From positions 18,848,001-18,912,000 of the forward strand of contig OZ249444.1 in the NCBI GenBank assembly GCA_965235115.1: a stretch of 64,000 bases of DNA, written 5' to 3'. Origin of the DNA: Laetmonice hystrix (Eukaryota). The notes under the pieces were generated by a model. It did no database searches. It was not told where the DNA came from and worked only from the letters and a program-made list of their open reading frames with translations. A program made the translations under genes and the position numbers. Of this stretch, positions 3,469 to 30,300 are shown in pieces (within the stretch, counting starts at the first letter, position 1; each line of letters begins with the position of its first letter).

Positions 3469-3578
3469 ATACAGGCGGCAGAACAACTAAATACAGGCGG
3501 CAGAACAACTAAATACAGGCGGCAGAACAACTAAATACAGGCGGCAGAACAACTAAATACAGGCGGCAGAACAACTAA
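3469..3578. repeat. 22-bp minisatellite, 5 perfect copies
   Basis: atacaggcggcagaacaactaa repeated head-to-tail with no spacers. Confidence 0.97.
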
Positions 3579-12500: not shown

Positions 12501-15422
12501 TAGAGTAGTCGCCTATACTCTCTGATCACATGATGTATTTAAAGGTAACCTTTTGATCAAAATATGATGAGAGGAACTTAATGTAAAAATAACTTAACTT
12601 CTGACACTTGTCCCTTGTACGTTGTTATTAAATTACTATAAAAATTATTCTCACCACACAATTCTCAAGCTCTGGTGCCATCAACCTAAATTTTAATTTT
12701 CATAAATCCAGCAAACTTCCCCCAAGATCCTATCTCGACCAACTTTATTTATACACAATAAAGGTCAGGCCAGGGTCAGAGTGCAGTACAGCCCCTTTCT
12801 GCGTCGAGCTTCAACTTCAATATTATGATTTGGTCATTTGACACCAACTGCGCAAACAGCCGCCAGCATCCGCCATTTGGAGCTACCGAAATGCCTTACG
12901 GAAATATTTATCGGTGTCGGAGACAACGGATTAGTTCTCAGGTTGACAGGATCGCTCTGTGGTCAGGCAGCTCCAGTTACTCGCGGACAGCAATGAGATC
13001 GGGTCGATGGCTGCGATCTCTGATCAGTAAGCCAGACCCATGGCCTTGTTCAGACAAGAGTTCAGACCTGGCTGTGGACCTCTTGTTTTCCTGTGCACTT
13101 TACGAGTCTTTGATAATCAACGCTTACCAACGCTAATCAACGCTTACACCCATCTCAGGGGGCTTTACCGGCTTAGAAATCGGGCCCTGAAAAACGCTAC
13201 GGTGTGAGACATTCACAACTTGACCATGTGCCAATTAATGTACCTTCTGGTCCCTTCACTAATGATTAGTAATGTAATGGTTTTGGAGTAATCTCTCTTT
13301 ATGTCATGATAAAATACTCTCCTTTGTGATGTTTTTTTTTGTGTGTGAAATAATCTGCAAGGACTATAAATATTTCGTCGTATATTTTGACAGGCCGTAC
13401 TGTCAAGGTGATAAAGATTTGCCTGTTTGCCTTTAAATGTTAAAAAAAAAGTCTCAGGCTATCTGTCTGATATCAAGACAAGACCAAAGAGAACCTGAAA
13501 CCTTTTTGGCGTAAGGTTATCTGTAATAGGACACCCCAGTCTGGTCTGAGCACATGCCTGGCACAGGTTATTCTAATCATACAGTGTGCCACAGCAGCTG
13601 CAGCACTTACTGAAGTTTCATGACATCTGAGAATAAAGACATTACATCTGCAGCAAGCAACAAATGTCAAGTACATCAGCATGGTACTTGAGTTGCATTT
13701 CACGGACTGCAGTCTTCCTTTGTTTGCCTTCTGTAGCCAAATCCAGGCATAAGCTTGCTTTCTTCCTATGCTCTCACACTGTTGTATGCGATCTTTTAGA
13801 TTACCGGATAGCTTTCGACAATACGTAATGCGTTGAAATAACTGGCAAACGTGTCTGGATTTAAAACCACTGAATTCATATTACTTTATACAGGCGTAGT
13901 TCAAGAGATGGAAACAATATACATTTGTATCTTTAAATGGAAGCTATCTGTCTCATGGTGTCTACCGGCCATACTTGGCCCATCAACACTGGCCATCATG
14001 GTCTATGTGAGATAATACCTCTCATGGTATGTCCTCCTACCACTGACAGACTGATCTCCCATCCTTCCTGTCGAACACCAATCGCAGGTGCTGGGTAGCC
14101 ATATCACCATCAGTCATATGCTATTCTACCATTCTCTATCATAGGGGCTCATCATATCCAGGCATTCAGCCAGGTAATGGACATCCTCTCCAGCTTCTTG
14201 ATGAGCATTAATGAGCCAATAAAATGGCCCTAGATTAATCTCCATCCGCTGGTATGCATGGTATCCTTATTAGGTGCTTGGTGATAGGTGCAATTAGCAC
14301 ATACATAGTAAACTACATTAAGACTGACAGTGATAAGTTGTTCTACTGCCAGAGCGTATAGATTTAAGTGTCTTCTACATTCTACCTAGAAATCTGGCCA
14401 GTAAAAATTTACTTTTTCACCTACATGTATTTCGAAATGCCTTTATATGAATAAGTATTCGATATGGTAAGAAATAAAAGCAACATTAGTGCATACACTG
14501 ATCTTTGAGTCCCAGATCTTGCGTATAATTTTAGAAAGGTTACACTTACAGACCGTTAACGATGTAATATTCATGATACATGATATGGGGTCTTCCTTTG
14601 TTTGAACCTTCCTGTTCACAGGCATGGGAAAGTTATAAAGCATTAACAACAATTATAGTTAGATGGTTAGCTATGATTATAGTATACATAATCTGTCATA
14701 TTTTTAGATTTACTCCCATGATCTTTTCTTGAAACCTTTTTAGCAGCTCTGTCTTTGTTTGCCTATAATGCTCAATATATGACATATTTTTCATTATGCT
14801 GGCCTACACCAACTAAAAACTCCTAGAGACGCACTCTGTGACTCACCCCTTCTAAGTCATGATAACGCCACTTCAACCTTATCTATCATATAAAAAATAA
14901 ATAAATAAGGTTCAAGCTAACCTCTATCTTAGACCTTCATGTTTATAAGCCTTGCAGATGAAGCCCTGATTATATATAATTGGATTTTTTTTCTTCAACG
15001 TCTTACTGAGTTACTGTTGACTATCTTCTGCTGTGACTACCAGAAAGTATTACAATAATAAACCACGCCGTTCCTATACACACTGTAAGAAAGTGCAACA
15101 GGACTCGGACAGAATGATATTGTTTTAACACCCAAGTAAACATTAATGATCACTTTGCCGCATTTTTGCACCGACATCAGTAAACAGCACCGCTTCTGCT
15201 GAACAACATTATACCCACAGTTCATTCAACACATACATATAAAAACCGGTTAAATAGTGACCACTACTGGGTAAAAAGGAGAAACGGTATGATACTAGAG
15301 TTAGGCTTGTCTATCCCAGGTACAGCAGGTTATCATACACCAGATGACAAACATGCAAGGGTGCTAATCATGCCATTCAACCACCAGCTAAAGAAGCATG
15401 CTACAGGAATCACACAAAAACA

Positions 15423-18400
15423 CTAGGTGCATACCTTGGTTGACTGTAAAGTCCCATATCCTTCATCAATGCGAGGAGATTTGGGGGTGTCTCGGAGTTG
15501 GGTATGCGGCATGGTATCCACCACTACAGACACTGTGGCATCGCGTGGCCCTTCCCCTACTGATTTTATTGGTACTCCAACCAGTCTGCTTCGAGATGTT
15601 GTGGCTCTAGGGATTGTATTATCCAAGATGACGGCTGAATGCTGCTTCACGGTTGCCAAAGTATCCTTTGGTTTATCATCTTTAGTGCCAAGAGAGTTCA
15701 GGTTAGGCTGAGGAGCTCTCGTGTCTCCACTGGAGTCTTTGTTAACTCTTGGCAGTCTACTTCTGAAGACAGGGAGTGCACTTTGTGGTTTGTTAGCAGT
15801 GTCCACATTATTGTTGGTGTTGCAGTTTTCCTTTCTGACAATCGTACTGTTTGACTGCCTTTCTTTGCCTACATCAACCTGAGGCGAGTTGAGTTCACTT
15901 GTCTTGTCTCGCTGGGACTTCGACTTTTCAAGTTCACTCTCACTATGGTTAGGAAGATGTTTGTTCTCGACAGAGCTGGCGTCACGTCCTTTTGAGGGTT
16001 GTTCAGTGGCTAGATTTAAAGGTTCCACCTTCTGTTGACTCGTGCTACCTAAATCTGTTGGAATTTTTATCTGGCTGCATCCATTTCGTTTTTCTTTCTC
16101 ACACCTCTTACATTTTGCACTGGCCTCCATATCCGTTTGCCCCGATTCCTCATCGACAGTACATGTGTGGATTGAACTATCTGAGACTGCTGTTTCTTTC
16201 ACGAACATTTTGTCCTCCTTTTCCTCTTCAGAACCCTGCAGGCACAGGTCAGAAGTTGCTGTGGTACGTTTCAGACCTGAAGTGTCCAACAGAAAAGATG
16301 TGCTGAGATTCTGTGAATAACGTCGTTCTGGATCAGATTTACGCTCCAAGTCGGGTGAGCTTGAACAGCGCGATGGTTTCGATGCCGACAACCGTTTGCT
16401 GTTCTTTCCAAACGAAAGCCCACTTGGATTACAACCTAATCCCTTGCCGAGAAAATCCTTATCACCATGCTCAGGCTCCTCTTCCATTGAATCAGAAGAG
16501 GAATCCTTGATGATCCGACTTTCAATGCCTTCCAACATGTCATCACAATAATACTCATATGCGTCTGAAGTAACAAAGAACATAGGCTTCCCATTAACAT
16601 AGATGGGAGATTCGTTTTCACCTGATGTTGGTGGGGATTCCATTTTCGAAGCAAGACACCTTTTCCTGTTTGACTGGCCACCAGTCAAACTCTGTGGACG
16701 CTTAAGAAACGATTTACACCTTCCTGGTGATTGTGGTGGTGTTTTGAAGTTCCCTTCTTGAGACGAGTCCCTTCTCAAAATGCTCTCTTCGGCCTTTGAA
16801 GATTCCACAGCCTGTGAACTGACCTGACCCAAGTCACATTGGCCCTTATCACCTTTGCTTACTTGAGCTTTTCTGGCATCTCCTTCAGGTACCTTTTCAT
16901 GTCGTAGACTGGGCTCAGAACAGGTGGGCGTCAACAAAGACCTGCTGTTACTATCAATCCTTGGATTACTGAAAGGCTCTCTGCCATGGTGCCTCACGTC
17001 AACATGTAAACTTGAGTCTATTTGTTGGCTGTCCTTCTTTTCAGTTATACTTGACCCAGATTCCGGCTGGCTTGGCCCTGCCGAATGTGAATCACTTCCA
17101 TCTAAATCAAGGTTGTCATCAGAGAGCATAATATCAGGGGTGATAGTGCTGGTACTTGTGAAGCACTCAAGCTCTGCATCCTCCAGGTTATTCAAATACT
17201 CCTCCATTTTTATGGTCTCCTCAGATTTAGCCTTTTTCAATCCTTCGACCTTACTGTCCTGTCCTGCTGAGCTGGACATGCGACTGGAATTTTTAACACA
17301 TTTCGGACTTGCACCTAAAGTTTTTGATTTGTTCACAGTTGTGTTTGATATTGATGTTCCAAGAATCTGATTTGACATAAATAGACTACAGTCTAATCCT
17401 TTATCCTTTTTGGTCGTGTCTTCGATTGCTAGGCCATGAAAGCCACCTTCAAGATCGACATATTTAGCAGAGCGGAGAACGTCATCTTCAGGGCTGCACT
17501 GTTCCCTTTCCTTTGAATGGCCTTCTGTCTCTGCCTCAAGTTCTGAGGCAGTGAGCGTGTCCTCTGAGTCTGTCCTCAGCATGTTGCACTCATACTCAGT
17601 GTTTTCTTCTAGTAAATCAATGGTTTCCTCCTGTAGGTTTTCAGAGCTGCTTCCAATGGTCGTTCCGTCATCATCAGTAGGCGAGGCTACAGGTGTTATA
17701 GAATCTCTGTTTGGGGCTTCAGTTGTTGTGGAACTGTCCGTTTCCGAACTCAGGAAACTTTGTCGTGAATCACGTTTTTCTGCTTCAACATCTTTCTTGT
17801 CTTCCATGGTAAAGTTGTGAGTTGACTCTTCACTAGATTCACTGTTGATTCCGCTGTCAAAGGCTGAATTGCTCATACTCTCCTGGCGAAAACTTTCACT
17901 CATCTCGCTCAAGTCAGCGCTGGCTGGTCTGGAACTTCGCCCACACCCCTTAGATTCTGACTCCTCAGTTGCCGCTGATAAAGCATCTTCACTCTCTCTT
18001 CTTTCGGCAGCTGGTTGGCATGCTGGCTCCTCAGATTTAGTCGATTTTCTAGCGGCCTCCTGTTGACTCATTTGCATTATCTTAGGTTTTTGTTGGGGTG
18101 CACATTCTATTACCAGAACAGTATCATTGTCATAACAGGTGGTGTATGGATCAGTATCCTTTGTGCTTACATCCTCATCCGACTTTGACACATCAGGTTG
18201 AGGGGGAGAACCAGCAGTATCAGTTTTAGCTGAACTTTCCTGGGATGGTTTTCTCAGATATGTCAGTTTAGATCTGTATGTATTGTATCCAGCATAGGGT
18301 TTACGCAGTTTGTTAGGGAGATCACTTAACGATGCTCCTGATGAAGGCTCCTTGGACTTTCCGTAATCATCCTCTGTGGTCGATGTTTTTGTAGGAATTG

Positions 18401-21400
18401 ACCGGACAGGTAATGTTTTGTTCTGAGCTTCTTTAGGTTGTTTCACAGACTTCCTTTCTGTAGTCTTTGCCGTGGTATTAGATGTCTCACTAGCTGCCAT
18501 TTCGATGGCCTCATACTTAGCTTTCACTGACTGTAAGGTCGGTTTAGTTGGTCTCTTGATACCACTACTTGAAGAACCTGGTGATGCAATCCTTCTTATT
18601 GGCACCTGGATCCGACTTTGTGCTGTCCTCTCTGCCACCTTTACTGCAACGCTCTCTGCCCTTAAGTCAACAGATGACGATGATAAGTTTGATGCTTTAA
18701 GATCAGCTTTCACTGATGCATCCTTTACGGTCCGTCCAGTCCCCTTCATACAGTTGTTATTAACTTGCGTTGAATTTGCCTCACTGGTAACTGTCCTTGA
18801 TGACTTAACATCTGTTCTTGAACGTAAATCACTTCTTGATGACCGTATATCTGTTTTTGATGACCTTATATCAGTTCTTGAGTGTTTCAAGTTGGTCCGA
18901 ATATTATTCCGTACATGCCCTACATCAGGACAAGTGGACTGTGCTGACCTTAAATCATTTTGATTTGCATGACCTTGAGTTGACCTTGGCTTCTGAAGAC
19001 CTGACGGCTGCTTTAACCCAGGCTTGGGAATGCTTTGCTTAAGTGAACCCTCAGCACTTTGTTGCGAGTTTTCAGTTTGTGGCCCCGTTCGTTTGGAACT
19101 GTACGCTTTAGTTGCCCCTTTGCCTGCAGCCGAGGACTGACTTTGTGTTGACCTTTGCTCTGAAATTCTGCTAAGATCCGACTTTGATGCCCGTGTTAAA
19201 TCTGTTTTGGAAGACGAGGGCAAAAGACTTCTTTGTAGGATTCTGGGTTGAGTGATATTTGAAGCAGGTTTCTGTCCATTTGGCTTCCTGTCATTCCTTG
19301 ATGAAGACTTCTCTAGCCCTGAGCTTGTCTGCTCTTTAGGAGCTGATATTCCCGATGAACTCCTCTCAGAAGGTAACCGCCGTGCTGGTCCTGCTGGTAC
19401 TTCAACATTTTTATTTCCTTGGTTTAGTCTTGCTGATGATCCTAGCTTCTTTATTGCACCAGTGAGGGTGGCAAAACTGGCAGCACTGGACAACTTGCTT
19501 TGCCCTCTGGGTGGTGGAACTGGCTTTTGATGGTCGCGGTCAGAATTTGTATTCATTTTGGGCTTTGGAACACCTCGCCTTGGGCTACTGGGCTGGCTGT
19601 TTGCTGGTGATCTTAATGCCGATTCCCTCTCTGGTGTTGCACCACGGCTTGAGGTTGGCGTGCCAATCTTAGACTGACCTTGTTGAGAACGATCAGGATA
19701 TCTCAATCTGCTTGGAGCATGTGAAGGCGAGGATAACGGAGACTGTGCAGTTTTTGATACTGACGCCGACTGACTTGTACTTTGTCTGGCCTGGGGGCCT
19801 GATGATGCTTCAGACGACACAGGCACAACATCTGGCGCAGGCACAACGGTATTCGGACTTTGGGCAGGTTTAAATGTTGTCAACTGACGTCGGGGGGAGC
19901 CAGGACTTTGAGGTATTCCACGGCGCACTGATGCTGGGCTTGGATGTGGAGACTGTGGATGAGAAGCTGGCTGAGATCTAGATGGCTGAGGTAGGCTCCG
20001 ACGAGGTGAAACAGGACTGGGCGGTACAATTCTTGAAGGAACAGCAGATCCTGCAACTCTGCCTTGAACGTGCTCTGTTGGTTGATTCTGAATGCGAGTC
20101 TCGGCTTGGGATCGCACGGAATGTTCTGTAATTTGAGGTAGGGTCCTTCTGGGCAGATATGGACTCTGTGATGGTGATCTTGGATGTGGTGGAGTTGGAG
20201 GTAAAGCTCTGTGTGGCACCGCTACACATGTAGTAATCCCCGGCGTAGTTGACCCAGTTGAATTCAAATCTCCGTCACTGCCAGTAGCACTGCAGCTCTC
20301 TTTCACTTTTTTCACTGATGAATAATTCAAACACTGTCTGGGTATGACGGAAGTTTTCTCTTGTGAAATATGAGATGTCCCCGTCTGGTATCTGTCCGTT
20401 TTTGTGTGAGTTCCAGGGTGAGGAACTTCAGCAGAAGTAGCTTCAATAAAGTCAGTGTCTTCTATGTCATCAGTGTGCCGGTTGATATCAACCACCGCTA
20501 ACTGAGTAATCCCAACGGCTGACTTATCCTTTTTATCGCACCTGACACGCACTCTCTGGGACACAACCTCGGTGTCACTCGAGTCAGATTCAGATAAAGT
20601 TAGAGGGCCGACGCTGCCTTCCGCAAACCTGTGTGGATGTTTTATGGCATTCCTGGACCTGGACTTTGGCTTGGTAGTTACTGTAGAGCTTGGTAGGAAG
20701 GACGGCGCGTGGTCCCGCTTCCTAGGCAGTGACGGAGACTGGGATGGGGAGGCGACATTCCCAAGCGGTGGCGGTAGGCCCCCTGCAGCAGCTGTTGTCC
20801 TACCTGAGGGTATGATTCGTTTCCCACCTGTAACACCGGTATATCCTCCAGCTACACCTGCCGATCCTCTCATCAAACCACTATGTTTTTTCAACTTGCC
20901 CTCAGGACGAGATGCACTGCTTCTCTCATCAACCACACCAGCGTGCTTCTTTCCACCCTTACGCAGCAACTTGGATGTTACAGGTCTTTGCCTTGATGAA
21001 CTGTGAGATTTTTCGTTAAGATCTTGCTCACTTGAGGAAGAACTAATAAGGTCACTATTACTGTTACTAAGACTAGACAATGACAGGCTAAGATAACGAT
21101 TAGCTGTTGATTTTGTCCTGGCAGATTTCACTGACGTCATCTTCCTTTGGTGAGATAAAACTGGTGAGGCATGTGCTTGCCGTTTAAGATGCGGAGACTG
21201 TTTCTTTGATACAGTTCGTAAGCTTACATAGGTACCCTTACCAGTCATGTCATCCTCAACATCATTTTCACCAGCAGAATCATCACATGATCCTGAAAAC
21301 TCACTCTCAGTGTTCACCGCTTTTGCTTTTACGGTCACTTTCTTTACCTCAATCTTGGATAATTGTTTATTTAACACGGAACATTGCTGATCATTTCGGT

Positions 21401-24400
21401 GAGGTTGGCAGTCTGCCGGCAGTGCAACATCATCATTAACATCATTATGAGGTACACCTGTGTTCATTATGGTATCACGGTCCTCACCACCTGTCTGCCT
21501 CTGGGTTGAGCCCTCAGGTGTGTCACCAGTACCTCTAACACTCGGATCACCGGGCCCACAAGCCTCCTTGCTGAGGTCTCTGGGGACTGTATCCACAGTT
21601 TCCTGCTTGTCTCCAGCTGTTATTCCCACCACACGTGGGTCCCTATTGTCAGGCACCCTATTGTTCCCCGAAACAACGCTTTTGGCATTGGGTATCTGAA
21701 CTGTGTTGATTTTTAAATAGTCTTCATACTCATCACAAGTGGACGCTCCCATCGTGTCCTCCACCCTGGGGCGACGATATAGAAGGTGTGGGCGGGGTCG
21801 TAGACCGTGACCAGAACCATCAAGGCGTGACGGGTCTGGCTGCCGTTGTGGTGGGGCTGGGCCAAGTTGCCTCTGAGGACTTCGCCGAGACTGACCCGCA
21901 TTTTTCATCATCATCAGCCTTAATCTCTGGTTGCGCTTAGCTTCAGCTGCGGCCCTCATTAGAGAACTTTTAGGAGTCTGCACTGCAGCATCACATTTTG
22001 TGATAGTGTTTGGTAACTGACCAAGCTGGTCCCGGGCCTCAGACCCAGCTTCAGACAAGGTGTCTGCGGTCTCCATATCCTCTCCCTGAACGTCCATACC
22101 TTGAAAAACCTGCTGTTGGTAAAGTACTCCCTCGGAGCCACAATGTAGATTGCTAACACAATTACTATCAGTCAACAGTTCGGTATTTGTGGCTGAAGTT
22201 TGTTTTTGGCTACAAATTACCAGTTGCGGTTCGGAGCTGTGCATGTCACCACTGGCAAAGCCAGTTTTCTGAAGTGGCGACAACGCTCTGCTAGGCTGCA
22301 CTGGTCTTGAGTAAAGGCCTGTAATTCCTTGGGGCCTAGCTATACTCCTCTTTGTGGCCCCAAGACAGACAGCATCTCCATTTGTCGACAATGAGCAGTT
22401 CGTGCTAGTGGTTTCACAACCTAATACATCAGTAAGAGCACCATTTAGGTCCTTAACTTGCTGTGCACTACGACTGTCTGGTATGGGTAGCTCACTATAT
22501 ATGTGGTCTGCACCTTTAAACTTCTCAGTCTTTCCACCCGCTGAACTAACATGATCAACACTATCACCATTATACCTCAATTCCTCTGATGAATACAAAT
22601 CTGGTCCATGTGTATGATCCCTTTCAGAAAAAGTCTGTGACACAGGATTCCAGAGTCTCCCCTGTTGGCGGACTTTATTTGCATTTGTATTTGCTATTCC
22701 AACTCGCTGGAGTGAACTAGAACTTGAGGCTGAACTGGAACAGTCTTGTGTTGAGATTTGGTCTTGGTTAAGTCGGTCAGACACAGGTCCGTCCCAGCTG
22801 ACACCTCTCCTGTACAATTTATTATCAGTGCTACAATACATATCTGGGGTGAGCACCTCATCTATAGTTTCATATATGTGACTGTCTGGGCTGACGGGGG
22901 TCCACCTTCTGGAGTCGGTTTCTGCCTCAGCTGGGGGTAGGTCGTATATCGGGGAGACATCAGTCAGGGATCTGGAGGTATTTGATGCTGAAGACATGAC
23001 CGGAGACACGACTGCGGAGGTCGGGGTCTGTCTGCGCTCAACATAGTGGGCCATGATGGGTTGGCTATGTCTCCGCTCAGCTGCCAACTCCAACTGGATA
23101 CTGTCCTGGGATGATCCACTCGCTGTGCTGAACCGCTTCTGCTGTTGATCCCGCATTTCAAACGCATCAAGACTCGTATTGGAGTAGCTCTGCGGCAGGC
23201 TGAGAATAAACTGTCCATCTGGTGAAGGTGAAGCACTTGGAGATGGTGAAGGTGTTTGGCATCCTGGGCCAGTGTGCCTCTTGAATCCCGCACGGAGTTC
23301 TGCCATCCTTATCCCACATGACGGGCTGCTGTATAAAGGCCACTTAAGCCCTGGCAGCGCTGATAATGGAGACAAAGGGGACACGGACCGCGTCATGACT
23401 GGAGATGCCGATGTCCTCCGATAGGACATCACAGGACTAGCAGTCACCAACTTTTGTTCATCACTCGGAACTGTTTGTAAAACAGGCGAAGCAGAAACTT
23501 TACGCACATGTTTAGAAGAATTGGTTGCTTTCATTTGTATGCCTGAGACTGGGAGCGCGGATCCCTGGCGCAGATAGAGTCTTTCATCTGAACTGACTGA
23601 CTTTAGATTCATCAACCTCAGCGTTCCTTGTGATAAACCAGCTTCGCCATCGTTAGACTTTGACCGCGGAGGGCCTTTCCTTGGACACATCTCCAGTTGA
23701 CTAGCCAGTAAAAATTCCGGGAGAGAACTCGTCATACTTTCATTTATGTCATCCCTGGCATCAATGTCAGCATTAAATACATCCTCAGCTTCATCACTCT
23801 CATCCCCATCCACTGCTACATCATCGTAAATCCTGTGATTAGTGTCCGTGGTGAGCATGCCAGGAGGCTGCCTTAGTCTCCTCCCAGTGTCATTCTGGCT
23901 GTCTCCTTTCCCCAGCATCTCACCTTTAAGGTGGCCTGAGATGCCATGCGGATGGCTCATCACTGGCTTAATGTCACACGGCGACGTTACTGTGGCCACT
24001 ATTGTGTTAACTGAACCAGCAGGTGGGTGGGATAAATTTACACAGTCATTTTTTACACCCTCCGATCCCCTGCCTTTGCCTGCTGTCCCCAGGCTCATAG
24101 AGATATCCGCTGGAGCTGCCGAGTCAGGAAATTGTATGAGAGACGCACGAGAGTGGGGGGATTTCATTGAGCCATCACAAGCCTGTGAGCAAAGCGGCCT
24201 TGACAGCTGACCGTCACACTTATCACTGCACTTCCTTGGCCCAGCTGGGGTCCTCCCACTAATGAGAACGGTCCTATTATCATCCACCTCAGTGACCTTA
24301 GCCCGGAGCAGGCTTGAGTGGTCAGTACATGTTGCTACACTGGACGTGACTTTGCCATGGGTGTTGTTGTCCACGCTGCTGGTGCTGCCCTCCTCTGCCA

Positions 24401-27305
24401 TGGTTATTGAGGGCCGTGATTCCCATGTCTGACCGGGAGGCGGTGACGGGTCGCGGCGCCCCGGCCGACCGCCGCCAACATGACTGACCCCGTCGTACAC
24501 ATCAGGCTCAGTCCCACCACCACAGTGGTCGTCACCGCTGCATGCTGATGTGGTATCGCTGTGGTTAGACCCCGCTGTTACCACTGTCACATACGATCCT
24601 AGCTCTACTTCACACACGTGATCAACAGTAAAATAAAGTAAACTTTCCTCCTTGTCAACTGCTGTTGGTAGCTGAGTGAACACACTTGCTGGACTACACT
24701 GGGCCAAAGTCTCACCGCGATTGTCCATGCCATTGCTTGTGAATGGGCATTCAGTGATGCAGGCCGGCTCCTTAAGTTGACTGCTCCATTCACACTCCTT
24801 ACTCACACCCCTTACTACAGCATCGTGGCCTTGAGTGACACTATCACTAAACGTATGTCCACAGATACCATCATCTATACTCGGCGCTTCACATCCATGC
24901 TTAAATCCACGCACATCTTGACAACCACCATTCCTAGTATCCACGGAGTTGTAGGGTCCCTGCGTGCAACAGTTTCCAGTGTTTAGCTCCTGTTGAGAGT
25001 TCCCTATGCAATGCCGTTTGTCCCAGCGCTCACGACTGTGATGTGTGGTGGTGTCTTGCCTCACTCCATGTGGCACGGTCGACTGACCCGCCGTCCACTC
25101 CCCCACTGCTACACGGCCTGCCGCCGCCTGGCCCCCACTGCCCGCGTGGTAGTGTTGGTGGTAGCTCCGTGCCTGTGACGACAGTGAGGATGATGACAGT
25201 TGTGGGCCGCTGAGAGTGCTGTCACCACCAGCGCTGTCATGGATGTGAAGGTCGAGACCGGCGAGGTGTGCTCCAGCAGAACTTTCTTGGCTGAGTGCAC
25301 ACGGAGCAGCAGCCAGTAGATCACTTGAAGGCACAGACGGGTAGTGACAGTTGGAAAACTTCCCATCCTGTTTCAGAGCCTGTGGCGAAAATGAATGATG
25401 AGGCAAGGCTGGGGGATTTGGATCAGGCCTGTTTTCACCACTAACATGAAACTGTCTTAGATCATCAAAGTGTTCACAAGGCTCAGCACATTTACATTGA
25501 GGTTTCGTCACGGAAGCACCATCATGACATGCAGAACTGTTACCACGGGCGTTATGCTGAACTAAACTTGTTGGGGTTCTGATGCTCACGTAATCACCAC
25601 TAGAATCTGACACCACTGTAGCTATACTTGGTAATCCGGTGGGCTTGAGCTGTTCCCCATCTTTTACCTCAACTCTCCCGGTATTAACGTCACTTATGTC
25701 TGCATCACATACAGCATCAGCACAAATGGCCGGGATGTTTAAAACATGTATTGTAGAGTTATCCGAGTTCACCGCCCTCTCCCCCTGCCCATCACCACAT
25801 ACACTGCTGACAGAGAGATTATCGGCCACTCCACAAGTGTCCTCACATCCAGGGGGTTGCTGCTGCCCATCACTCGTGGCTGCAGCCACCACCACACTGT
25901 CACAGTTCACAGGGCACTCCGATGTCACGTCCAAGCGGGCATTCTCAGCATGCCTAACCTGAGCCCCGGTTGGCTCATCAATGTTGTCCCTTGGTAGCGC
26001 ACCACCCAAGTCATCTGCAGCTGGCTGTACGTTGCAGCCAGCTCCACGAATAGAGAAGTTCTGTTGAGAGTCAAGTATGCTCTGCCTCACTGGAATGAAG
26101 CCAAAGGCACCAGTACTTAGGCCGCCATTTCCAGCATTTTTAACATTGTTATTCCTGGTATTTTTACTACTATGCTCATTGGAAGCACTTTGTGTTTTGA
26201 CTACGTCAGTCGTTGCCGTGTCAGCGCTCACTTCAATGTCTGTAGTGGAGGTGCCCTGGACACTTAGTTCAGCATCACGGCTCAAGTGCCCATCCTCCGG
26301 GTCTTCAGGCAAGGATAATACATGCTTAGCATCCTTAACATTTGGGGCTTTACCAACATCCCTTTCCACTTCACGTGTCCTATTTTTTGCTGACACATAA
26401 TTAACACTTTTTACACATGGTTTGGGGATTCCTCCATACCTCATGTTGGCAGTCGGAAGACAACTTACTTTGGTCACTTCCTTAGTAGTTTCAATTGATC
26501 TCTTATTATGTTCACACACATCCTTTGTTTTCTCTTTGCTGGGTTGGTCGTTTTCTGTGCCACAGCTGGGAATACTGTTCGGCTCTTGAGCCTTCCTGAG
26601 TGACCTTGGACTCAAAAAGAAAGTTTTTCTTTGCAGTTTTGAATTCGGCTTTGAATTAACCGTAGGCACTTTCGAAGTAGACTTGACTGCACTAGCTTTT
26701 GGAGACGTACCTGAAATATTGCTTGTACACACAGTGGGTGGGCAGGTTTGCGACAAAGTCTGTTCACCACCTTGATTAACACCGCCTGCATTTACACTAA
26801 CACTCTGAACACCTGATATACACTTTGCACTTTTCTTTGAATCAGATGTTTGCTTTCCATCTGTTTTAAACCCAGGTAAAAGTAGACTCCTAAACGGCTG
26901 TTTATGACATTTGGCTCCTGAGGAAGGGGCGGCTGTTTTTGTTTTTGAAGCTGCACTTGGGACTGCTACACCTTTAGATAATTTGTGTTCTTTCTTCACA
27001 CCTGAGTCACATTTCCCCTGATCAGATTTTTTTGTGCATGATTTAGGGGTACCTTTCTTTTCCCTACCTGAGCTAGTATGGGTGCCGGTGCCACCACCAA
27101 AGAGTTTTGCTTGCAACTCACGCACAATTCCGCCCCCACCTTTATCCGGGGGTGGGGGCAACTGTACTGGGGGTCCTGGGACCTCTTCGGGAACCGTTGT
27201 GTGTTTAACATTAGACTTATTGTCCTTCCTGTCCGTTTTCCGCCTTTTCATAAAGACATGCCGGCCAAATAACGGCAAGCGCGACTTTTTGGGTTCCTTT
27301 TCCAT
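15423..27305 (-). CDS. Giant 3960-aa low-complexity, probably intrinsically disordered scaffold-like protein; single uninterrupted ORF or giant exon
   Basis: 11,883-nt stop-free frame, far beyond chance, and more GC-rich than its flanks. The ATG is in a strong Kozak context (aacATGG) with an in-frame stop 5 codons upstream. S/P/T/K/R/E-rich with no recognisable globular domain. A possible donor AAG|GTATGC lies at 15435/15434, just before the stop. Confidence 0.9.
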   Translation of the reverse strand: MEKEPKKSRLPLFGRHVFMKRRKTDRKDNKSNVKHTTVPEEVPGPPVQLPPPPDKGGGGIVRELQAKLFGGGTGTHTSSGREKKGTPKSCTKKSDQGKCDSGVKKEHKLSKGVAVPSAASKTKTAAPSSGAKCHKQPFRSLLLPGFKTDGKQTSDSKKSAKCISGVQSVSVNAGGVNQGGEQTLSQTCPPTVCTSNISGTSPKASAVKSTSKVPTVNSKPNSKLQRKTFFLSPRSLRKAQEPNSIPSCGTENDQPSKEKTKDVCEHNKRSIETTKEVTKVSCLPTANMRYGGIPKPCVKSVNYVSAKNRTREVERDVGKAPNVKDAKHVLSLPEDPEDGHLSRDAELSVQGTSTTDIEVSADTATTDVVKTQSASNEHSSKNTRNNNVKNAGNGGLSTGAFGFIPVRQSILDSQQNFSIRGAGCNVQPAADDLGGALPRDNIDEPTGAQVRHAENARLDVTSECPVNCDSVVVAAATSDGQQQPPGCEDTCGVADNLSVSSVCGDGQGERAVNSDNSTIHVLNIPAICADAVCDADISDVNTGRVEVKDGEQLKPTGLPSIATVVSDSSGDYVSIRTPTSLVQHNARGNSSACHDGASVTKPQCKCAEPCEHFDDLRQFHVSGENRPDPNPPALPHHSFSPQALKQDGKFSNCHYPSVPSSDLLAAAPCALSQESSAGAHLAGLDLHIHDSAGGDSTLSGPQLSSSSLSSQARSYHQHYHAGSGGQAAAGRVAVGEWTAGQSTVPHGVRQDTTTHHSRERWDKRHCIGNSQQELNTGNCCTQGPYNSVDTRNGGCQDVRGFKHGCEAPSIDDGICGHTFSDSVTQGHDAVVRGVSKECEWSSQLKEPACITECPFTSNGMDNRGETLAQCSPASVFTQLPTAVDKEESLLYFTVDHVCEVELGSYVTVVTAGSNHSDTTSACSGDDHCGGGTEPDVYDGVSHVGGGRPGRRDPSPPPGQTWESRPSITMAEEGSTSSVDNNTHGKVTSSVATCTDHSSLLRAKVTEVDDNRTVLISGRTPAGPRKCSDKCDGQLSRPLCSQACDGSMKSPHSRASLIQFPDSAAPADISMSLGTAGKGRGSEGVKNDCVNLSHPPAGSVNTIVATVTSPCDIKPVMSHPHGISGHLKGEMLGKGDSQNDTGRRLRQPPGMLTTDTNHRIYDDVAVDGDESDEAEDVFNADIDARDDINESMTSSLPEFLLASQLEMCPRKGPPRSKSNDGEAGLSQGTLRLMNLKSVSSDERLYLRQGSALPVSGIQMKATNSSKHVRKVSASPVLQTVPSDEQKLVTASPVMSYRRTSASPVMTRSVSPLSPLSALPGLKWPLYSSPSCGIRMAELRAGFKRHTGPGCQTPSPSPSASPSPDGQFILSLPQSYSNTSLDAFEMRDQQQKRFSTASGSSQDSIQLELAAERRHSQPIMAHYVERRQTPTSAVVSPVMSSASNTSRSLTDVSPIYDLPPAEAETDSRRWTPVSPDSHIYETIDEVLTPDMYCSTDNKLYRRGVSWDGPVSDRLNQDQISTQDCSSSASSSSSLQRVGIANTNANKVRQQGRLWNPVSQTFSERDHTHGPDLYSSEELRYNGDSVDHVSSAGGKTEKFKGADHIYSELPIPDSRSAQQVKDLNGALTDVLGCETTSTNCSLSTNGDAVCLGATKRSIARPQGITGLYSRPVQPSRALSPLQKTGFASGDMHSSEPQLVICSQKQTSATNTELLTDSNCVSNLHCGSEGVLYQQQVFQGMDVQGEDMETADTLSEAGSEARDQLGQLPNTITKCDAAVQTPKSSLMRAAAEAKRNQRLRLMMMKNAGQSRRSPQRQLGPAPPQRQPDPSRLDGSGHGLRPRPHLLYRRPRVEDTMGASTCDEYEDYLKINTVQIPNAKSVVSGNNRVPDNRDPRVVGITAGDKQETVDTVPRDLSKEACGPGDPSVRGTGDTPEGSTQRQTGGEDRDTIMNTGVPHNDVNDDVALPADCQPHRNDQQCSVLNKQLSKIEVKKVTVKAKAVNTESEFSGSCDDSAGENDVEDDMTGKGTYVSLRTVSKKQSPHLKRQAHASPVLSHQRKMTSVKSARTKSTANRYLSLSLSSLSNSNSDLISSSSSEQDLNEKSHSSSRQRPVTSKLLRKGGKKHAGVVDERSSASRPEGKLKKHSGLMRGSAGVAGGYTGVTGGKRIIPSGRTTAAAGGLPPPLGNVASPSQSPSLPRKRDHAPSFLPSSTVTTKPKSRSRNAIKHPHRFAEGSVGPLTLSESDSSDTEVVSQRVRVRCDKKDKSAVGITQLAVVDINRHTDDIEDTDFIEATSAEVPHPGTHTKTDRYQTGTSHISQEKTSVIPRQCLNYSSVKKVKESCSATGSDGDLNSTGSTTPGITTCVAVPHRALPPTPPHPRSPSQSPYLPRRTLPQITEHSVRSQAETRIQNQPTEHVQGRVAGSAVPSRIVPPSPVSPRRSLPQPSRSQPASHPQSPHPSPASVRRGIPQSPGSPRRQLTTFKPAQSPNTVVPAPDVVPVSSEASSGPQARQSTSQSASVSKTAQSPLSSPSHAPSRLRYPDRSQQGQSKIGTPTSSRGATPERESALRSPANSQPSSPRRGVPKPKMNTNSDRDHQKPVPPPRGQSKLSSAASFATLTGAIKKLGSSARLNQGNKNVEVPAGPARRLPSERSSSGISAPKEQTSSGLEKSSSRNDRKPNGQKPASNITQPRILQRSLLPSSSKTDLTRASKSDLSRISEQRSTQSQSSAAGKGATKAYSSKRTGPQTENSQQSAEGSLKQSIPKPGLKQPSGLQKPRSTQGHANQNDLRSAQSTCPDVGHVRNNIRTNLKHSRTDIRSSKTDIRSSRSDLRSRTDVKSSRTVTSEANSTQVNNNCMKGTGRTVKDASVKADLKASNLSSSSVDLRAESVAVKVAERTAQSRIQVPIRRIASPGSSSSGIKRPTKPTLQSVKAKYEAIEMAASETSNTTAKTTERKSVKQPKEAQNKTLPVRSIPTKTSTTEDDYGKSKEPSSGASLSDLPNKLRKPYAGYNTYRSKLTYLRKPSQESSAKTDTAGSPPQPDVSKSDEDVSTKDTDPYTTCYDNDTVLVIECAPQQKPKIMQMSQQEAARKSTKSEEPACQPAAERRESEDALSAATEESESKGCGRSSRPASADLSEMSESFRQESMSNSAFDSGINSESSEESTHNFTMEDKKDVEAEKRDSRQSFLSSETDSSTTTEAPNRDSITPVASPTDDDGTTIGSSSENLQEETIDLLEENTEYECNMLRTDSEDTLTASELEAETEGHSKEREQCSPEDDVLRSAKYVDLEGGFHGLAIEDTTKKDKGLDCSLFMSNQILGTSISNTTVNKSKTLGASPKCVKNSSRMSSSAGQDSKVEGLKKAKSEETIKMEEYLNNLEDAELECFTSTSTITPDIMLSDDNLDLDGSDSHSAGPSQPESGSSITEKKDSQQIDSSLHVDVRHHGREPFSNPRIDSNSRSLLTPTCSEPSLRHEKVPEGDARKAQVSKGDKGQCDLGQVSSQAVESSKAEESILRRDSSQEGNFKTPPQSPGRCKSFLKRPQSLTGGQSNRKRCLASKMESPPTSGENESPIYVNGKPMFFVTSDAYEYYCDDMLEGIESRIIKDSSSDSMEEEPEHGDKDFLGKGLGCNPSGLSFGKNSKRLSASKPSRCSSSPDLERKSDPERRYSQNLSTSFLLDTSGLKRTTATSDLCLQGSEEEKEDKMFVKETAVSDSSIHTCTVDEESGQTDMEASAKCKRCEKEKRNGCSQIKIPTDLGSTSQQKVEPLNLATEQPSKGRDASSVENKHLPNHSESELEKSKSQRDKTSELNSPQVDVGKERQSNSTIVRKENCNTNNNVDTANKPQSALPVFRSRLPRVNKDSSGDTRAPQPNLNSLGTKDDKPKDTLATVKQHSAVILDNTIPRATTSRSRLVGVPIKSVGEGPRDATVSVVVDTMPHTQLRDTPKSPRIDEGYGTLQSTKVCT
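18789..18881 (-). repeat. Coding ~21-bp repeat within the giant ORF (SRTDIRS-SKTDIRS-SRSDLR-SRTDVKS-SRTV)
   Basis: Direct translation; units start TCA-AGA/AAA-ACN/AGT-GAT. Confidence 0.85.
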
Positions 27306-30300
27306 GTTTATAGAATACTGTATTCAGTACTTAACCAGTTTTGTATGTTCACTCAGCACATAAAACACATGTCGTGTAATAAGTTCACATAGACCACACT
27401 GGACATCAGCATTTTGCACACAGCTCGCCACTTAAGATATTTCTAATGTGAAATATTTCTAATGTGAAATCCTTAATGTGACAATACCAATATGAGCAGT
27501 ATATATGTACCGGATCAGCATACCATCAGGTTACCTTGTTCAGTTAGCTCCTAATTCAAGTGTTTCACCACATGAAACTATCCTCTCAGTAACTTCCTCC
27601 TTTGAAAAAATACATCCTCACCAGCCACACCAAAGTTGCATTAATATGCAGTTAAGCATGCTACCATATCCAAGATGGGCGACTTTAGGAAAGCACCTCA
27701 TGAACCATGGATATCAGTATGGATGAACTCGTAGGGATTCATACGTGACCCCTAAGCTCTTGAACCAACATTTGCCGATGTGAAACTGGATTCCAGTAGC
27801 TCTGCTTACAAAGAATTCACGATGGTTTATATCCGAACACGTATGAATGATCGCTCAGTGAAGTGGGTCACACCCATCCTAAGCTGCAAGTTCGCGTATG
27901 TAATACTGGCCTCACCGTTCTCACCGCTGTACAACACTATCTATACCATATCATCTAGACCCTTTCAAAACTAGCTTGTCTGAACTTGATGTACCATCCT
28001 CACAAACATACGTGATAGCATGGTCAAAGGCGGAGCAGTCCCTTTTTACCACAAGGATTTCTGTATTAATCAACCAGTCAAGTTCCATTCCACTTAATGC
28101 AATACCTTGATCCATCCGTCCCTCAACAAGCAGAGATAACGGGCTAGCTGTAAGGTTTCCATGTAGGTTTAGCAGTAAGTTTCCCCGGACCATCAGCAGC
28201 AGACCGCACGTGTACAAGTCACGTGTATTACATGAGGTCCTGATCAAAGGAATACCATAGTCGAGTCACAGCAGATGTTTACACGGGCATCTCTAGGCAA
28301 TGGTTAAAAAAACACTGTAAAATAACCACTATGATTTGGCTGAGCACTGTCGGATCTGTAGCCTGTGTACTGCAATGTTTAACCCCTTGTTCCTCTGTAG
28401 ACTGGAGACGGGGCTGGAGACAGATTACCGCTCTTACATCGCGATCATTACACTTTGTGTTCAACGCAAGGAAACTTTTGTTACAGTAGATTCAACAGAA
28501 CATTCTTCGAAAGATGCACTGACCCTGCACTTAAGTGACTTTCCGCTTGTTGTCGCGGGAGGCTGAGATGATTTAAGGCCCCCTTTAAGTCGTAACGTCT
28601 CAAGGACTACGTCATAAACACCTGTAGATGGCAACTCCTACGGATGACCTTCTTGTTGACAACCGGTTCCTTTTTTCTCCAGCGGGCACGTACCCTATAG
28701 ATCACCAATGGAAACCAAACAAACCAAAAGTTGTAAGGGTGACACTCTGTGGGGCTTCACCACCTGGCGCTTGTCAAGTGCACAATTCCCGCTGTTACCT
28801 CGTACAGTCACCCCCGAATTGCTCCAGTTGCTGGCAGGGTATCATATTGTAGGTTAAGCAGTCCCCTTTTGTGTGGCCCGGTCACAATATTGTCAACTTC
28901 AGAGTTATAAAGATCCCGAGTGTTTGAAGTTGGCGCCGCCGTTTGACTGTAGGGTTTGTGACCTCCAGTTGGAACTCGTCGATATTCACTGGAGAGGTTT
29001 ATGTGTCCTAACGAGTATTCCTGAGTCTATCCAACCAGTTTACTGCTTTCGTTAGCTTCTTTCCACTTTATGGTCCTCTTGAATGAAGGCACACTTGTCA
29101 CTCAGAAATGCGAAATTGCGACGATATTCACACATTTCCAGCGGATTTAAAGTTGCTCTTATTTATAGGTTAAGTATTAACGGATGTATCCTTACGTGCA
29201 GTCCTTGTGCTAATGCTATCCTCAATGTTGTCTGACCTTGTAAGGTTTTGCGATGGTCCTCTGTCGGCTGTTAACGCTGGAAGACCGATGATAAGTAAAT
29301 GATAAATGACCCTCTTTGCTAGCGATGTGATAAAAGTATAGAACTCTACCACTGTATCCTAGCAGGCCTGTGCGGGTCCACACCAGCGAATTGATTGGGT
29401 CGTGTATAATGTGGTCAATTAATATGGTCGCATGAAAATGAGGACTGAGAATATGTTGTTGGTGGACGTGCTGACACTGACTTCCATCCTTTTGAAAACA
29501 GATGATACTGGCCAAAGTCACAAGCTCAGTCTGCAGTCATTTCGAGAACACGCTCCACTTCCAAGCACACGTCCAGTGAAAGGTTGATGACTTGATGTTG
29601 TAAATGTAACTGCAATCCTGCGCACCTGTCTCACCAAATAGAGGGGATACTGGAGTTAGAGTCCTACCATTACAGTTCATGCATGACAGGGTGCAAACAG
29701 AAGGCCTATGTCCATTCAGCTCCTGTTAAATTTGAATTCCTCTTTGGTATTCACCTCCACAGCTGTGCTCTTGACTTACATCTCAGGATTCAGTAGGTAC
29801 ATATAAATATCATATACACACATGCCTTGCTGGTTGATGATGTGACTTCTGCTGCCATGCACACTTACGTCCTTCAGCCTCAGTTGGCTCTCCACGGCTA
29901 CTATATGCTGGCTGTTTGTATGTGACTCATGTAAGGAGCTTTCAGCCTGAATACCTTCTCACCTAAGGACAAGCGCTTGATACAGCCCTGATATTTGAAC
30001 TAGTTGGCTTGATCTCCCTCTGAACCCAGCACTGCTGGGTGGCCGAAGCGCAAAAGCAACACTTCCTTTAAACTCTTTGCTAGGTGTGCACTTTTTAACC
30101 GGAGCTCCCTTCCGGTTTCCATAAATTTGACATTTTTAGGGATGAATAACCATATCAGTCTGGATCCCCACGCTTCGCTCTGATATCGCTTGTCAGATTG
30201 GGACGAATAAAAAATGGCTCCTCACCGGATGAGGCGGGTAGATGAGTGTGGGAAAACGCTGCCGCTGGAGAATCATATTTATGTAAGACTCTCACTGTAA

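What the first reader, a model, noticed from the sequence alone, without database searches (positions are those of the whole stretch)
15423..27317. 11.9-kb uninterrupted coding block with no folded domain, possibly a symmetric giant exon
Seen: 3960 codons without a stop, in a genome whose other exons here are 100-250 nt. A CAG at 27318-27320 lies 12 nt in frame before the ATG, and AAG|GTATGC lies at 15435 just before the stop. Using both gives an 11,883-nt phase 0/0 exon that could be skipped without a frameshift. The acceptor has a poor pyrimidine tract and the ATG has a strong Kozak context, so a stand-alone single-exon CDS is equally possible. Established: giant IDR-encoding exons create giant isoforms in genes such as ankyrins. 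Inference: this is a giant isoform module or an orphan giant IDP. I could not identify flanking host exons.
Basis: partly seen in the sequence, partly recalled or inferred. Interest (0 to 1): 0.7.

Follow-up and report, generated by a model that had tools for sequence, protein, structure and literature searches.

The report
Giant one-exon disordered orphan protein gene
An invertebrate genome carries a real, single-copy gene whose roughly 3,960-residue, almost entirely unfolded protein is written in one 11.9-kb exon; a related species keeps it, no known family matches it, and it most likely starts at its own ATG and splices on to a downstream exon that I could not find.

Summary
The other five frames stay open for at most 178 codons.

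It is a real gene. A related species keeps the whole ORF at 59% amino-acid identity, with 40 strongly conserved islands. It is single-copy in its 627-Mb genome. It has no Pfam or PDB match. An exhaustive profile search of 1.84 billion proteins with its middle part found only that relative. AlphaFold finds only four short local elements in the 1,626 residues folded.

The cassette reading is not supported:
- Conservation starts exactly at the ATG, which the relative shares.
- The only possible in-frame acceptor is pyrimidine-poor.

The stand-alone reading is also unlikely. Near-perfect conservation stops exactly at AAG|GT, and the two species then read VCT* and VSRPVILGSIAPGMALY*. That is the pattern of a shared donor followed by an intron.

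The best model is a giant first coding exon joined to at least one unfound downstream exon. I obtained no RNA evidence; the only runs offered were DNA.

Function is a guess. It looks like a multivalent docking scaffold, with an enriched, conserved S-x-L-P motif that resembles EB1-binding SxIP.

The scan noted a similar giant one-exon orphan elsewhere in this genome.

The parts
15435..27305 (-). Giant coding exon from the ATG to the last codon before the donor: 3,957 codons for a disordered protein.
   Evidence: the ORF, with other frames closed; one relative keeps it at 59% identity over 3,931 aligned residues.
27303..27305 (-). Start codon ATG (A at -3, G at +4). The Met is shared with the relative.
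   Evidence: sequence. P0003 begins MEKEAKKSRLPLFGR against MEKEPKKSRLPLFGR here.
27318..27320 (-). CAG, the only AG between the upstream in-frame TGA (27324-27326) and the ATG. It is the candidate acceptor of the cassette model. It is judged unlikely as a coding acceptor but could still be a 5'UTR acceptor.
   Evidence: about 9 of the 19 preceding bases are pyrimidines. No comparative or RNA support.
15429..15437 (-). Donor site AAG|GTATGC (exon ends at 15435, phase 0).
   Evidence: sequence; conservation with the relative ends exactly here. After the shared V (GTN), this genome reads CT* and the relative reads SRPVILGSIAPGMALY*.
15423..15425 (-). TAG that closes the open frame 4 codons past the donor. 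It is a true stop only if the donor is not used.
   Evidence: The relative has no stop at this place.
27273..27284 (-). SRLP (aa 8-11) in the basic context KKSRLPLFGRH; an SxIP-type motif, conserved.
   Evidence: SRLP is a working EB-binding SxIP motif in myomegalin (PMC5626540).
27147..27161 (-). LPPPP (aa 49-53) inside the conserved island VPEEVPGPPVQLPPPPDKGGGGIVRELQAKLFGG. It fits the EVH1-ligand pattern.
   Evidence: The link to EVH1 ligands is my own knowledge.
22863..23828 (-). Conserved central block (aa 1160-1481) with tyrosine motifs RIYDDV (aa 1160), PIYDLP (aa 1454) and HIYETI (aa 1478), and RRHSQP (aa 1411).
   Evidence: identity is 68-90% here. The SH2 and 14-3-3 readings are pattern matches only.
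21891..21971 (-). Predicted basic amphipathic helix (aa 1779-1805, KSSLMRAAAEAKRNQRLRLMMMKNAGQ), nearly identical in the relative (2 of 27 residues differ).
   Evidence: helix at residues 659-685 of the folded part, pLDDT 68-81. (conservation).
18306..21185 (-). Strongly basic Ser/Thr/Pro-rich region (aa 2041-3000, net charge about +80) with four conserved RRx[LIV]P motifs.
17841..17858 (-). DSGINS (aa 3150-3155) in an island identical in both species. It fits the DSGxxS phosphodegron pattern.
   Evidence: Pattern match only.
16506..16604 (-). Small predicted hairpin plus helix (aa 3568-3600, IYVNGKPMFFVTSDAYEYYCDDMLEGIESRIIKD), almost invariant.
   Evidence: pLDDT 54-69..
16071..16205 (-). 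Small predicted hairpin plus helix carrying conserved H-x-C ... C-x-x-C ... C (aa 3701-3745). Possibly a zinc-knuckle-like microdomain.
   Evidence: pLDDT 59-79. His and Cys are kept in the relative. Metal binding is an inference.
15750..15782 (-). Tandem SALP and SRLP (aa 3842-3852, KPQSALPVFRSRLPRVNK), basic, with no acidic residue, identical in the relative.

Best explanation
This is the giant first coding exon of a single-copy, lineage-restricted protein-coding gene. Translation starts at the ATG at 27305. The exon encodes 3,957 residues of non-repetitive, almost wholly disordered protein and ends at the donor AAG|GTATGC (15435|15434). From there the message is spliced to at least one downstream exon that I could not locate. 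The protein has about 40 conserved short islands (1,339 aa) separated by fast-evolving linker. Its parts are a basic N-terminus, a conserved tyrosine-motif block, a 960-residue basic Ser/Pro-rich region and an acidic C-terminal third. This is the build of a multivalent docking scaffold that works through short linear motifs. My specific guess is a cytoskeleton-associated scaffold that reaches growing microtubule ends through EB-binding SxIP-type (S-x-L-P) motifs and recruits SH2, EVH1 and 14-3-3-type partners. Shown: the ORF, its conservation, single copy, lack of any family or fold, and conservation that starts at the Met and ends at the donor. Inferred: use of the donor, expression, and all of the function. 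My odds: a real selected coding gene 0.9; ATG start plus spliced donor about 0.7; scaffold acting through linear motifs about 0.5; the EB/microtubule-end part about 0.2. The overall confidence given (0.6) is for the gene-structure statement together with the general scaffold reading.
For: The ORF is 3,960 codons, against at most 178 in the other frames. One relative (ENA assembly, 588-kb contig) carries it as three adjoining calls, P0003, P0001 and P0002. Identity is 59% over 3,931 aligned residues, with 40 islands at 13 or more identities per 15. An ORF this long cannot persist in two diverged species without selection for translation. It is single-copy in the 627-Mb genome, with no paralogue for N-terminal, middle or C-terminal queries. 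There is no Pfam family and, for the C-terminal part, no PDB match. A profile of aa 1121-1900 against 1.84e9 representatives found only the relative. AlphaFold mean pLDDT is 36.8 and 34.1. Composition is S 14.4% with few aromatic residues, mean hydropathy is -0.82, and no membrane-span-like stretch exists. Start: the same Met begins the relative's call and the N-terminal island, a TGA lies 6 codons upstream, and the acceptor is poor. Donor: identity is 33/34 up to K, then nothing, and the two species' frames close at different places. Motifs: S-x-L-P occurs 11 times against 2.4 expected (0 of 1,000 block shuffles reach it) and 10 are kept in the relative. [ST]x[IL]P occurs 14 times against 5.3, more than any of the 23 other orderings of the same residue classes. 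SRLP is a proven EB-binding motif in myomegalin (PMC5626540).
Against: There is no RNA evidence at all. The run search listed no RNA holder for 10 kb of the ORF, although earlier notes of the scan report RNA for other genes of this animal. Expression may therefore be low or tissue-restricted. No downstream exon was found in 55 kb. The relative's copy has two frame breaks, near aa 316-329 and 3107-3135. These could be assembly errors, but I could not check because its DNA was not obtainable. The motif enrichment was found post hoc among about 30 patterns. Thirteen of the 14 motifs have Leu rather than the preferred Ile, and four have an acidic residue in the core. Language-model look-alikes (MTUS2-like, AMER2, NCKAP5, APC) all score 0.76-0.86, which is chance level by the tool's own statement. 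A bipartite-NLS-like N-terminus (KK-x12-KRRK) would fit a nuclear role equally well.
Confidence: 0.6

Rival explanations
1. Stand-alone single-exon gene. The message is not spliced at 15435, and the protein ends ...QSTKVCT at the TAG at 15423.
For: A complete ATG-to-stop ORF exists. No downstream exon was found in 55 kb. Earlier notes report another giant one-exon orphan in this genome (unchecked).
Against: The relative has no stop there and reads 17 unrelated residues after the shared K-V. Conservation of 33/34 collapses exactly at a good donor, AAG|GTATGC. The nearest AATAAA lies 2.7 kb downstream.
Confidence: 0.15
2. Symmetric giant cassette exon (27317-15435, phase 0/0) of a larger host gene, as in giant ankyrins.
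For: The arithmetic works: 11,883 nt, in frame at both ends. The donor is supported.
Against: There is a single possible acceptor, and its pyrimidine tract is weak. Conservation and the relative's gene call both begin at the Met. No coding-like open stretch lies in the 20 kb up to the end of the ATP1B gene on the same strand. The ORF holds no ankyrin-type or other domain.
Confidence: 0.07
3. A fast-evolving orthologue of a known giant scaffold (for example an MTUS, NCKAP5, AMER or APC-like microtubule-end protein) whose defining domain lies in the unfound downstream exons.
For: The same three look-alikes turned up for two separate parts of the protein. To my knowledge these families also combine a large disordered exon with SxIP motifs.
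Against: Scores are 0.76-0.86, at chance level by the tool's own figures. There is no Pfam hit for AMER, NCKAP5 or APC repeats at E<=1. The exhaustive profile search found no relative. No coiled-coil-like exon was seen downstream.
Confidence: 0.12
4. Not a functional protein gene: an untranslated or decaying ORF, a mobile element or an assembly artefact.
For: There is no RNA evidence. The relative's copy has two frame breaks.
Against: An 11.9-kb open frame, and 2,809- and 838-codon frames in the relative with islands at 80-100% identity, cannot be neutral. It is single-copy, not repetitive, and has no transposon or viral domains. DNA contigs of three runs from a single sample (possibly the one the genome was assembled from) hold 85-90% of its words.
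Confidence: 0.03

Closest known systems
Giant ankyrin exons (440-kDa ankyrin-B, 480-kDa ankyrin-G)
   Same: One exon of many kilobases encodes thousands of disordered residues that act as a docking platform, in part for microtubules (PMC7401806, listed).
   Different: Those are in-frame cassettes between folded ankyrin domains. Here conservation starts at an ATG, the acceptor is poor, no ankyrin-type domain or flanking exon was found, and there is no sequence similarity.
SxIP-motif microtubule plus-end tracking proteins (myomegalin SRLP; by my own knowledge also MTUS2/TIP150, NCKAP5L/CEP169, AMER2, APC, CLASP)
   Same: Basic Ser/Pro-rich disordered regions carry [ST]x[IL]P motifs without acidic neighbours. 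SRLP is itself a proven EB ligand (PMC5626540). The motif is enriched and conserved here.
   Different: There is no detectable homology to any of them. EB binding is untested. Most copies here are S-x-L-P and several lack the basic context.
The other giant one-exon orphan of this genome
   Same: Same genome; one exon; thousands of non-repetitive disordered residues; kept in very few other genomes; no family; scaffold role guessed from motifs (unchecked).
   Different: It is not a paralogue: own-genome searches with three parts of this ORF found only this locus. This one appears to splice on at its 3' end, and I have no RNA evidence for it.
Tyrosine-phosphorylated docking adaptors (p130Cas-, Gab- or IRS-type) - from my own knowledge
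   Same: A long disordered region with conserved [IL]-Y-[DE]-x-[PVI] sites (IYDDV, IYDLP, IYETI) of the kind bound by Nck, Crk and Src-family SH2 domains.
   Different: Only three such conserved sites in 3,960 residues. No SH3, PH or PTB anchoring domain. No homology.

Membership tests
Giant-ankyrin-type cassette exon | Usable in-frame acceptor and donor, so the exon can be included or skipped | tested here: inconclusive
   The donor is supported by comparison. The acceptor is weak, and conservation begins at the ATG. No RNA was available to test either junction.
Giant-ankyrin-type cassette exon | Flanking exons encoding ANK repeats, ZU5-UPA or death domains | tested here: not met
   No Pfam domain in the ORF. 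No coding-like open stretches in 20 kb upstream or 55 kb downstream, by codon score and by eye. This is a weak test, because short exons would be missed.
SxIP-motif +TIP (functional class) | [ST]x[IL]P in a basic, Ser/Pro-rich disordered context without acidic residues in the core | tested here: met
   aa 8 KKSRLPLFGR, aa 3842 and 3849 KPQSALPVFRSRLPRV, aa 2693 QRSLLPSSSK, aa 281. There are 14 motifs against 5.3 expected, and 10 are conserved.
SxIP-motif +TIP (functional class) | Direct binding to the EB homology domain and tracking of growing microtubule ends | not testable with these tools
   Needs a binding assay or live imaging. The animal's own EB homology exon was located for such a test (L002:1495-1647).
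AMER / NCKAP5 / APC (Pfam PF09422, PF15246, PF05923 and related) | Match to the family's Pfam model | tested here: not met
   0 families at E<=1 over all 3,960 residues.
MAP2/tau/MAP4 | Tubulin-binding repeats (PF00418) encoded just downstream of a giant projection-domain exon | tested here: not met
   All 23 PF00418 matches of the genome lie on another chromosome (C21:12.27 Mb), none near C10:18.8-18.9 Mb.
Intrinsically disordered protein (descriptive class) | No stable fold over most of its length | tested here: met
   Mean pLDDT is 36.8 (aa 3115-3960) and 34.1 (aa 1121-1900), with 748/846 and 747/780 residues below 50. The composition is typical. Only 41% of the protein was folded, and with a two-sequence alignment.

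The most novel reading that the evidence does not exclude
A protein family found so far in only two related invertebrates: a scaffold of about 4,000 or more residues, almost domain-free and written in one exon. It would carry an array of about ten conserved S-x-L-P motifs, with SRLP sites at both ends of the chain, and so tether cargo or signalling partners (SH2, EVH1, 14-3-3) to EB proteins on growing microtubule ends. That would be a newly evolved giant +TIP with no counterpart in model organisms.
Probability: 0.15. Interest if true: 0.55.

Novelty: new member of a known kind. Interest (0 to 1): 0.38.

Why it matters
Giant disordered proteins encoded by single huge exons are known (giant ankyrins are the case cited here). 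Almost all described cases belong to old, recognisable families. This one has no detectable relative among billions of proteins apart from one related species, yet a third of it is under tight constraint in short islands. That makes it a clean case for studying how long linear-motif scaffolds arise and are maintained. Together with the other giant orphan exons noted in this genome, it suggests that this lineage is unusually rich in them. In practice it also warns annotators: the gene has an ATG and an in-frame stop, but the comparative evidence says the stop lies in an intron. Without transcript or functional data its wider importance is modest.

Tried and rejected
1. RNA test of the junctions. 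The look-up of sequencing runs (kind rna) listed no RNA holder. The three runs offered, laid on 9700-15699, were DNA contigs with unbroken cover and no joints. They say nothing about splicing, and both capped calls are now spent.
2. DNA of the relative, for dN/dS and for the donor letters: not obtainable, because the sample file is too large.
3. Homology. Pfam at E<=1, a PDB profile search with the C-terminal alignment, three word-indexed searches and one exhaustive profile search found nothing but the relative.
4. ESM Atlas look-alikes: EXPH5, MTUS2-like, AMER2, NCKAP5 and APC, all at 0.76-0.86. That is within the range shuffled proteins reach, so they are leads only.
5. Complex prediction with two copies of the animal's own EB homology exon plus aa 3830-3869: no verdict (score 0.02, controls not run). 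By the tool's own statement this is no evidence either way, and peptide interfaces are untested there.
6. Hunt for flanking exons. I used a codon-usage score, a listing of all minus-strand open stretches, a coiled-coil-like composition filter over 55 kb downstream, and the longest open stretches in 20 kb upstream. Nothing was convincing, and exons under about 25 codons would be missed.
7. MAP2/tau idea: rejected, because the tubulin-binding repeats lie on another chromosome.
8. ATP1B read-through or fusion: rejected. That gene ends 20.7 kb upstream on the same strand and encodes an extracellular C-terminus (own knowledge).
9. AKAP-like reading of the helix at aa 3583-3600, and FFAT and LIR readings of the same island: considered by eye only and not pursued.
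10. CDK-type [ST]Px[KR] sites and generic [ST]P sites: not enriched.


Full report
**Observation**

The window holds one open reading frame on the minus strand from 27305 to 15423. It has 3,960 codons plus a stop and begins with ATG.
- ATG at 27305-27303, with A at -3 and G at +4.
- A CAG at 27320-27318, 12 nt upstream and in frame.
- An in-frame TGA at 27326-27324. The CAG is therefore the only AG through which coding sequence could enter from an upstream exon.
- AAG at 15437-15435 followed by GTATGC.
- TAG at 15425-15423.

The proposed 27317-15435 exon is 11,883 nt, which is phase 0 at both ends. The ORF is not a chance feature. The other five frames of the same stretch contain 105-388 stops and stay open for at most 178 codons. 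The three codon positions differ in composition in the way coding sequence does. The ORF is not repetitive: the only tandem repeat inside it is a 21-nt x3 array at 18819-18881.

**Is it a real gene?**

A word-indexed search of 5.8 billion proteins with the whole ORF found one protein, P0001. It has 2,809 aa, is 55% identical, and comes from a 588-kb contig of an ENA assembly. On that contig it is flanked, on the same strand and almost without spacing, by calls of 339 and 838 aa. Separate searches retrieved these as P0003 and P0002.

Together the three pieces cover the ORF from residue 1 to residue 3957, at 59% identity over 3,931 aligned residues. Conservation is strongly uneven:
- 40 islands totalling 1,339 residues keep at least 13 of every 15 residues.
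- Stretches such as aa 481-960 fall to 32-40%.

An 11.9-kb frame kept open here, frames of 2,809 and 838 codons kept open in a species this diverged, and islands of 80-100% identity between variable linkers are the signature of a translated sequence under purifying selection on short segments.

The relative's copy is broken into three calls by two frame changes, near aa 316-329 and near aa 3107-3135. Both lie in poorly conserved linker. I could not tell error from reality because the relative's DNA could not be fetched. Conservation resumes at full strength after each break, so the downstream parts are still selected.

In its own 627-Mb, 35-contig genome the gene is single-copy. N-terminal, middle and C-terminal queries each find only this locus. 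DNA contigs of three runs from a single sample, possibly the one the genome was assembled from, hold 85-90% of the sampled words of 15200-25199. One 15.9-kb contig runs from 13136 well past the part of the ORF I laid. The word share implies roughly 0.4% difference per base in the ORF, against about 0.7-0.9% substitutions plus several indels in the non-coding 6 kb laid. That is a rough hint of constraint within the species, no more.

**What family?**

None that can be detected:
- Pfam gives no family even at E<=1 over all 3,960 residues.
- A profile of the C-terminal 846 residues finds nothing in the PDB.
- A two-sequence profile of the best-conserved 780 residues (aa 1121-1900) was scored by HMMER against all 1.84 billion cluster representatives. 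It found only P0001.
- The language-model look-alikes score 0.76-0.86, which the tool itself says shuffled proteins reach a third of the time. They are EXPH5, an MTUS2-like cluster, AMER2, NCKAP5 and APC.

**Is it unfolded?**

AlphaFold2 with the two-sequence alignments gives mean pLDDT 36.8 for aa 3115-3960 and 34.1 for aa 1121-1900. In these two parts, 748 of 846 and 747 of 780 residues fall below 50. Only four local elements rise above that:
- A basic amphipathic helix at aa 1779-1805.
- A helix at aa 3354-3383.
- A hairpin plus helix at aa 3568-3600 (IYVNGKPMFFVTSDAYEYYCDDMLEGIESRIIKD, almost invariant).
- A hairpin plus helix at aa 3701-3741, whose conserved H-x-C ... C-x-x-C ... C could be a small zinc knuckle. 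Metal binding is an inference.

Composition fits an IDP. Serine is 14.4%, F, Y, M and W together are 4%, and mean hydropathy is -0.82. The most hydrophobic 19-residue window scores only 1.24, so there is no membrane span. Two caveats apply: only 41% of the chain was folded, and the alignment was shallow.

**The two ends**

At the 5' end, the relative's gene call begins at the same methionine (MEKEAKKSRLPLFGR against MEKEPKKSRLPLFGR here). The first 75 residues are among the best conserved of the N-terminal third. About 9 of the 19 bases before the CAG are pyrimidines. The acceptor of the EB1 exon of this genome, read, is strongly pyrimidine-rich. No coding-like open stretch stands out in the 20 kb upstream. 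That region is bounded by the last exon of a sodium-pump beta gene on the same strand. I therefore take the ATG as the start. The CAG could still be the acceptor of a 5'UTR intron, which would not make the exon a cassette.

At the 3' end, 33 of the last 34 residues before the donor are identical in the relative (...VSVVVDTMPHTQ[LF]RDTPKSPRIDEGYGTLQS-TK). After the shared valine (GTN), the two sequences have nothing in common and close at different places: VCT* here and VSRPVILGSIAPGMALY* there. A coding C-terminus would be expected to keep its stop. An intron after a conserved AAG|GT explains both sequences at once. The valine-serine that follows K in the relative is what GTA-AGT, the consensus donor, would encode. 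That cannot be verified without its DNA.

I conclude, at about 0.7-0.8, that the exon is spliced at 15435 and that the TAG lies in an intron. I could not find the next exon. The following gave nothing convincing:
- A codon-usage score trained on the ORF.
- A listing of every minus-strand open stretch of 30 codons or more in 1-15422.
- A composition filter over a further 40 kb fetched from the genome.

Exons shorter than about 25 codons would escape all of these. The nearest AATAAA is 2.7 kb past the TAG.

**RNA**

This is the main gap. The three runs it did list proved, when laid on 9700-15699, to be DNA: unbroken cover of exon and non-exon alike, contigs up to 160 kb, and no joints. Earlier notes of this scan report RNA support for the neighbouring sodium-pump gene and for another giant exon in this genome (unchecked by me). 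The silence here may therefore mean low or tissue-restricted expression, but it proves nothing.

**How it probably works**

Charge is laid out in blocks:
- aa 1-240 is basic (net +32).
- aa 241-1200 is weakly acidic and poorly conserved.
- aa 1201-1900 is a neutral, conserved core.
- aa 2041-3000 is basic and Ser/Thr/Pro-rich (net about +80).
- aa 3001-3720 is acidic (net about -48).
- The last 240 residues are slightly basic.

Within the conserved islands, several patterns match known docking motifs:
- LPPPP at aa 49.
- RIYDDV, PIYDLP and HIYETI at aa 1160, 1454 and 1478.
- RRHSQP at aa 1411.
- Four RRx[LIV]P motifs between aa 2386 and 2580.
- DSGINS at aa 3150, in an island identical in both species.

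One motif stands out statistically. S-x-L-P occurs 11 times against 2.4 expected from composition-preserving block shuffles. None of 1,000 shuffles reaches that count, and 10 of the 11 are kept in the relative. The wider [ST]x[IL]P occurs 14 times against 5.3, more often than any of the 23 other orderings of the same residue classes. The copies at the two ends of the chain sit in basic, acid-free contexts: KKSRLPLFGR at aa 8 and KPQSALPVFRSRLPRVNK at aa 3842-3852. That is the context described for EB-binding SxIP motifs. SRLP itself is the working EB1/EB3-binding site of myomegalin, abolished by LP-to-NN mutation (PMC5626540).

My committed reading is a multivalent linear-motif scaffold, with EB-mediated association with microtubule ends as the most specific guess. 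I hold the scaffold idea at about 0.5 and the EB part at about 0.2. Several cautions apply:
- The enrichment was found post hoc among about 30 patterns.
- Most copies carry Leu rather than Ile.
- Four have acidic residues in the core.
- The N-terminus also fits a bipartite nuclear-localisation pattern.

**Comparison and novelty**

As a kind of thing, a giant exon encoding a giant disordered docking platform, it resembles the giant ankyrin exons. It is not a member of that family: the acceptor, the flanking domains and the sequence similarity are all missing. It behaves on paper like an SxIP +TIP, but no family membership is supported. MAP2/tau is excluded, because all tubulin-binding repeats of the genome lie on another chromosome. 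The scan has already described a similar giant one-exon orphan elsewhere in this genome (s1-344605). The two are not paralogues.

I rate it a new member of a known kind. It is of moderate interest, limited by the lack of transcript and functional evidence.

Noticed in passing
G000:C21:12265600-12282905 (+), outside the window: All 23 matches of the tau/MAP2 tubulin-binding repeat (PF00418) in this genome lie in one 17-kb stretch. About ten are back to back in one 530-aa open frame, and two more are in a 941-aa open frame. To my knowledge, tau, MAP2 and MAP4 usually have three to five repeats.
   Followed up: no
window 47995-48219, 50170-50379 and 52382-52606 (minus strand); first exon beyond the window end at about 67037-67180: The sodium-pump beta-subunit gene is on the same strand as the giant ORF and ends 20.7 kb upstream of its ATG.
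   Followed up: partly
relative's contig (ENA ERZ26222911), at places matching ORF aa ~316-329 and ~3107-3135: The relative's copy of the ORF is split into three gene calls by two frame changes, both in poorly conserved linker. They could be assembly indels, real lesions or small introns. This could not be decided without its DNA.
   Followed up: partly
window 18819-18881: The only tandem repeat inside the ORF: 21 nt x 3 at 80% match, encoding the heptad-like TDIRSS(K/R) run in ...SRTDIRSSKTDIRSSRSDLRS....
   Followed up: no
window 9700-15699: The three DNA runs differ from the assembly at about 0.7-0.9% of bases plus several short indels in this non-coding stretch, and the differences are partly shared between runs. 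The ORF's word share (0.85-0.90) implies roughly half that. This is a rough sign of heterozygosity with constraint on the ORF.
   Followed up: partly
L002:1495-1647 (-) = G000:C2:11009975-11010091 region: The EB homology domain of the animal's EB1 gene lies in one exon (LEETRVSVESLEKERDFYFGKLRDIEVLCQETESSELPVVKNILDILYATE). A possible donor GAG|GTACAG follows, so the usual acidic, aromatic-ended tail (known to me from other EB1 proteins) is probably in a further exon.
   Followed up: partly
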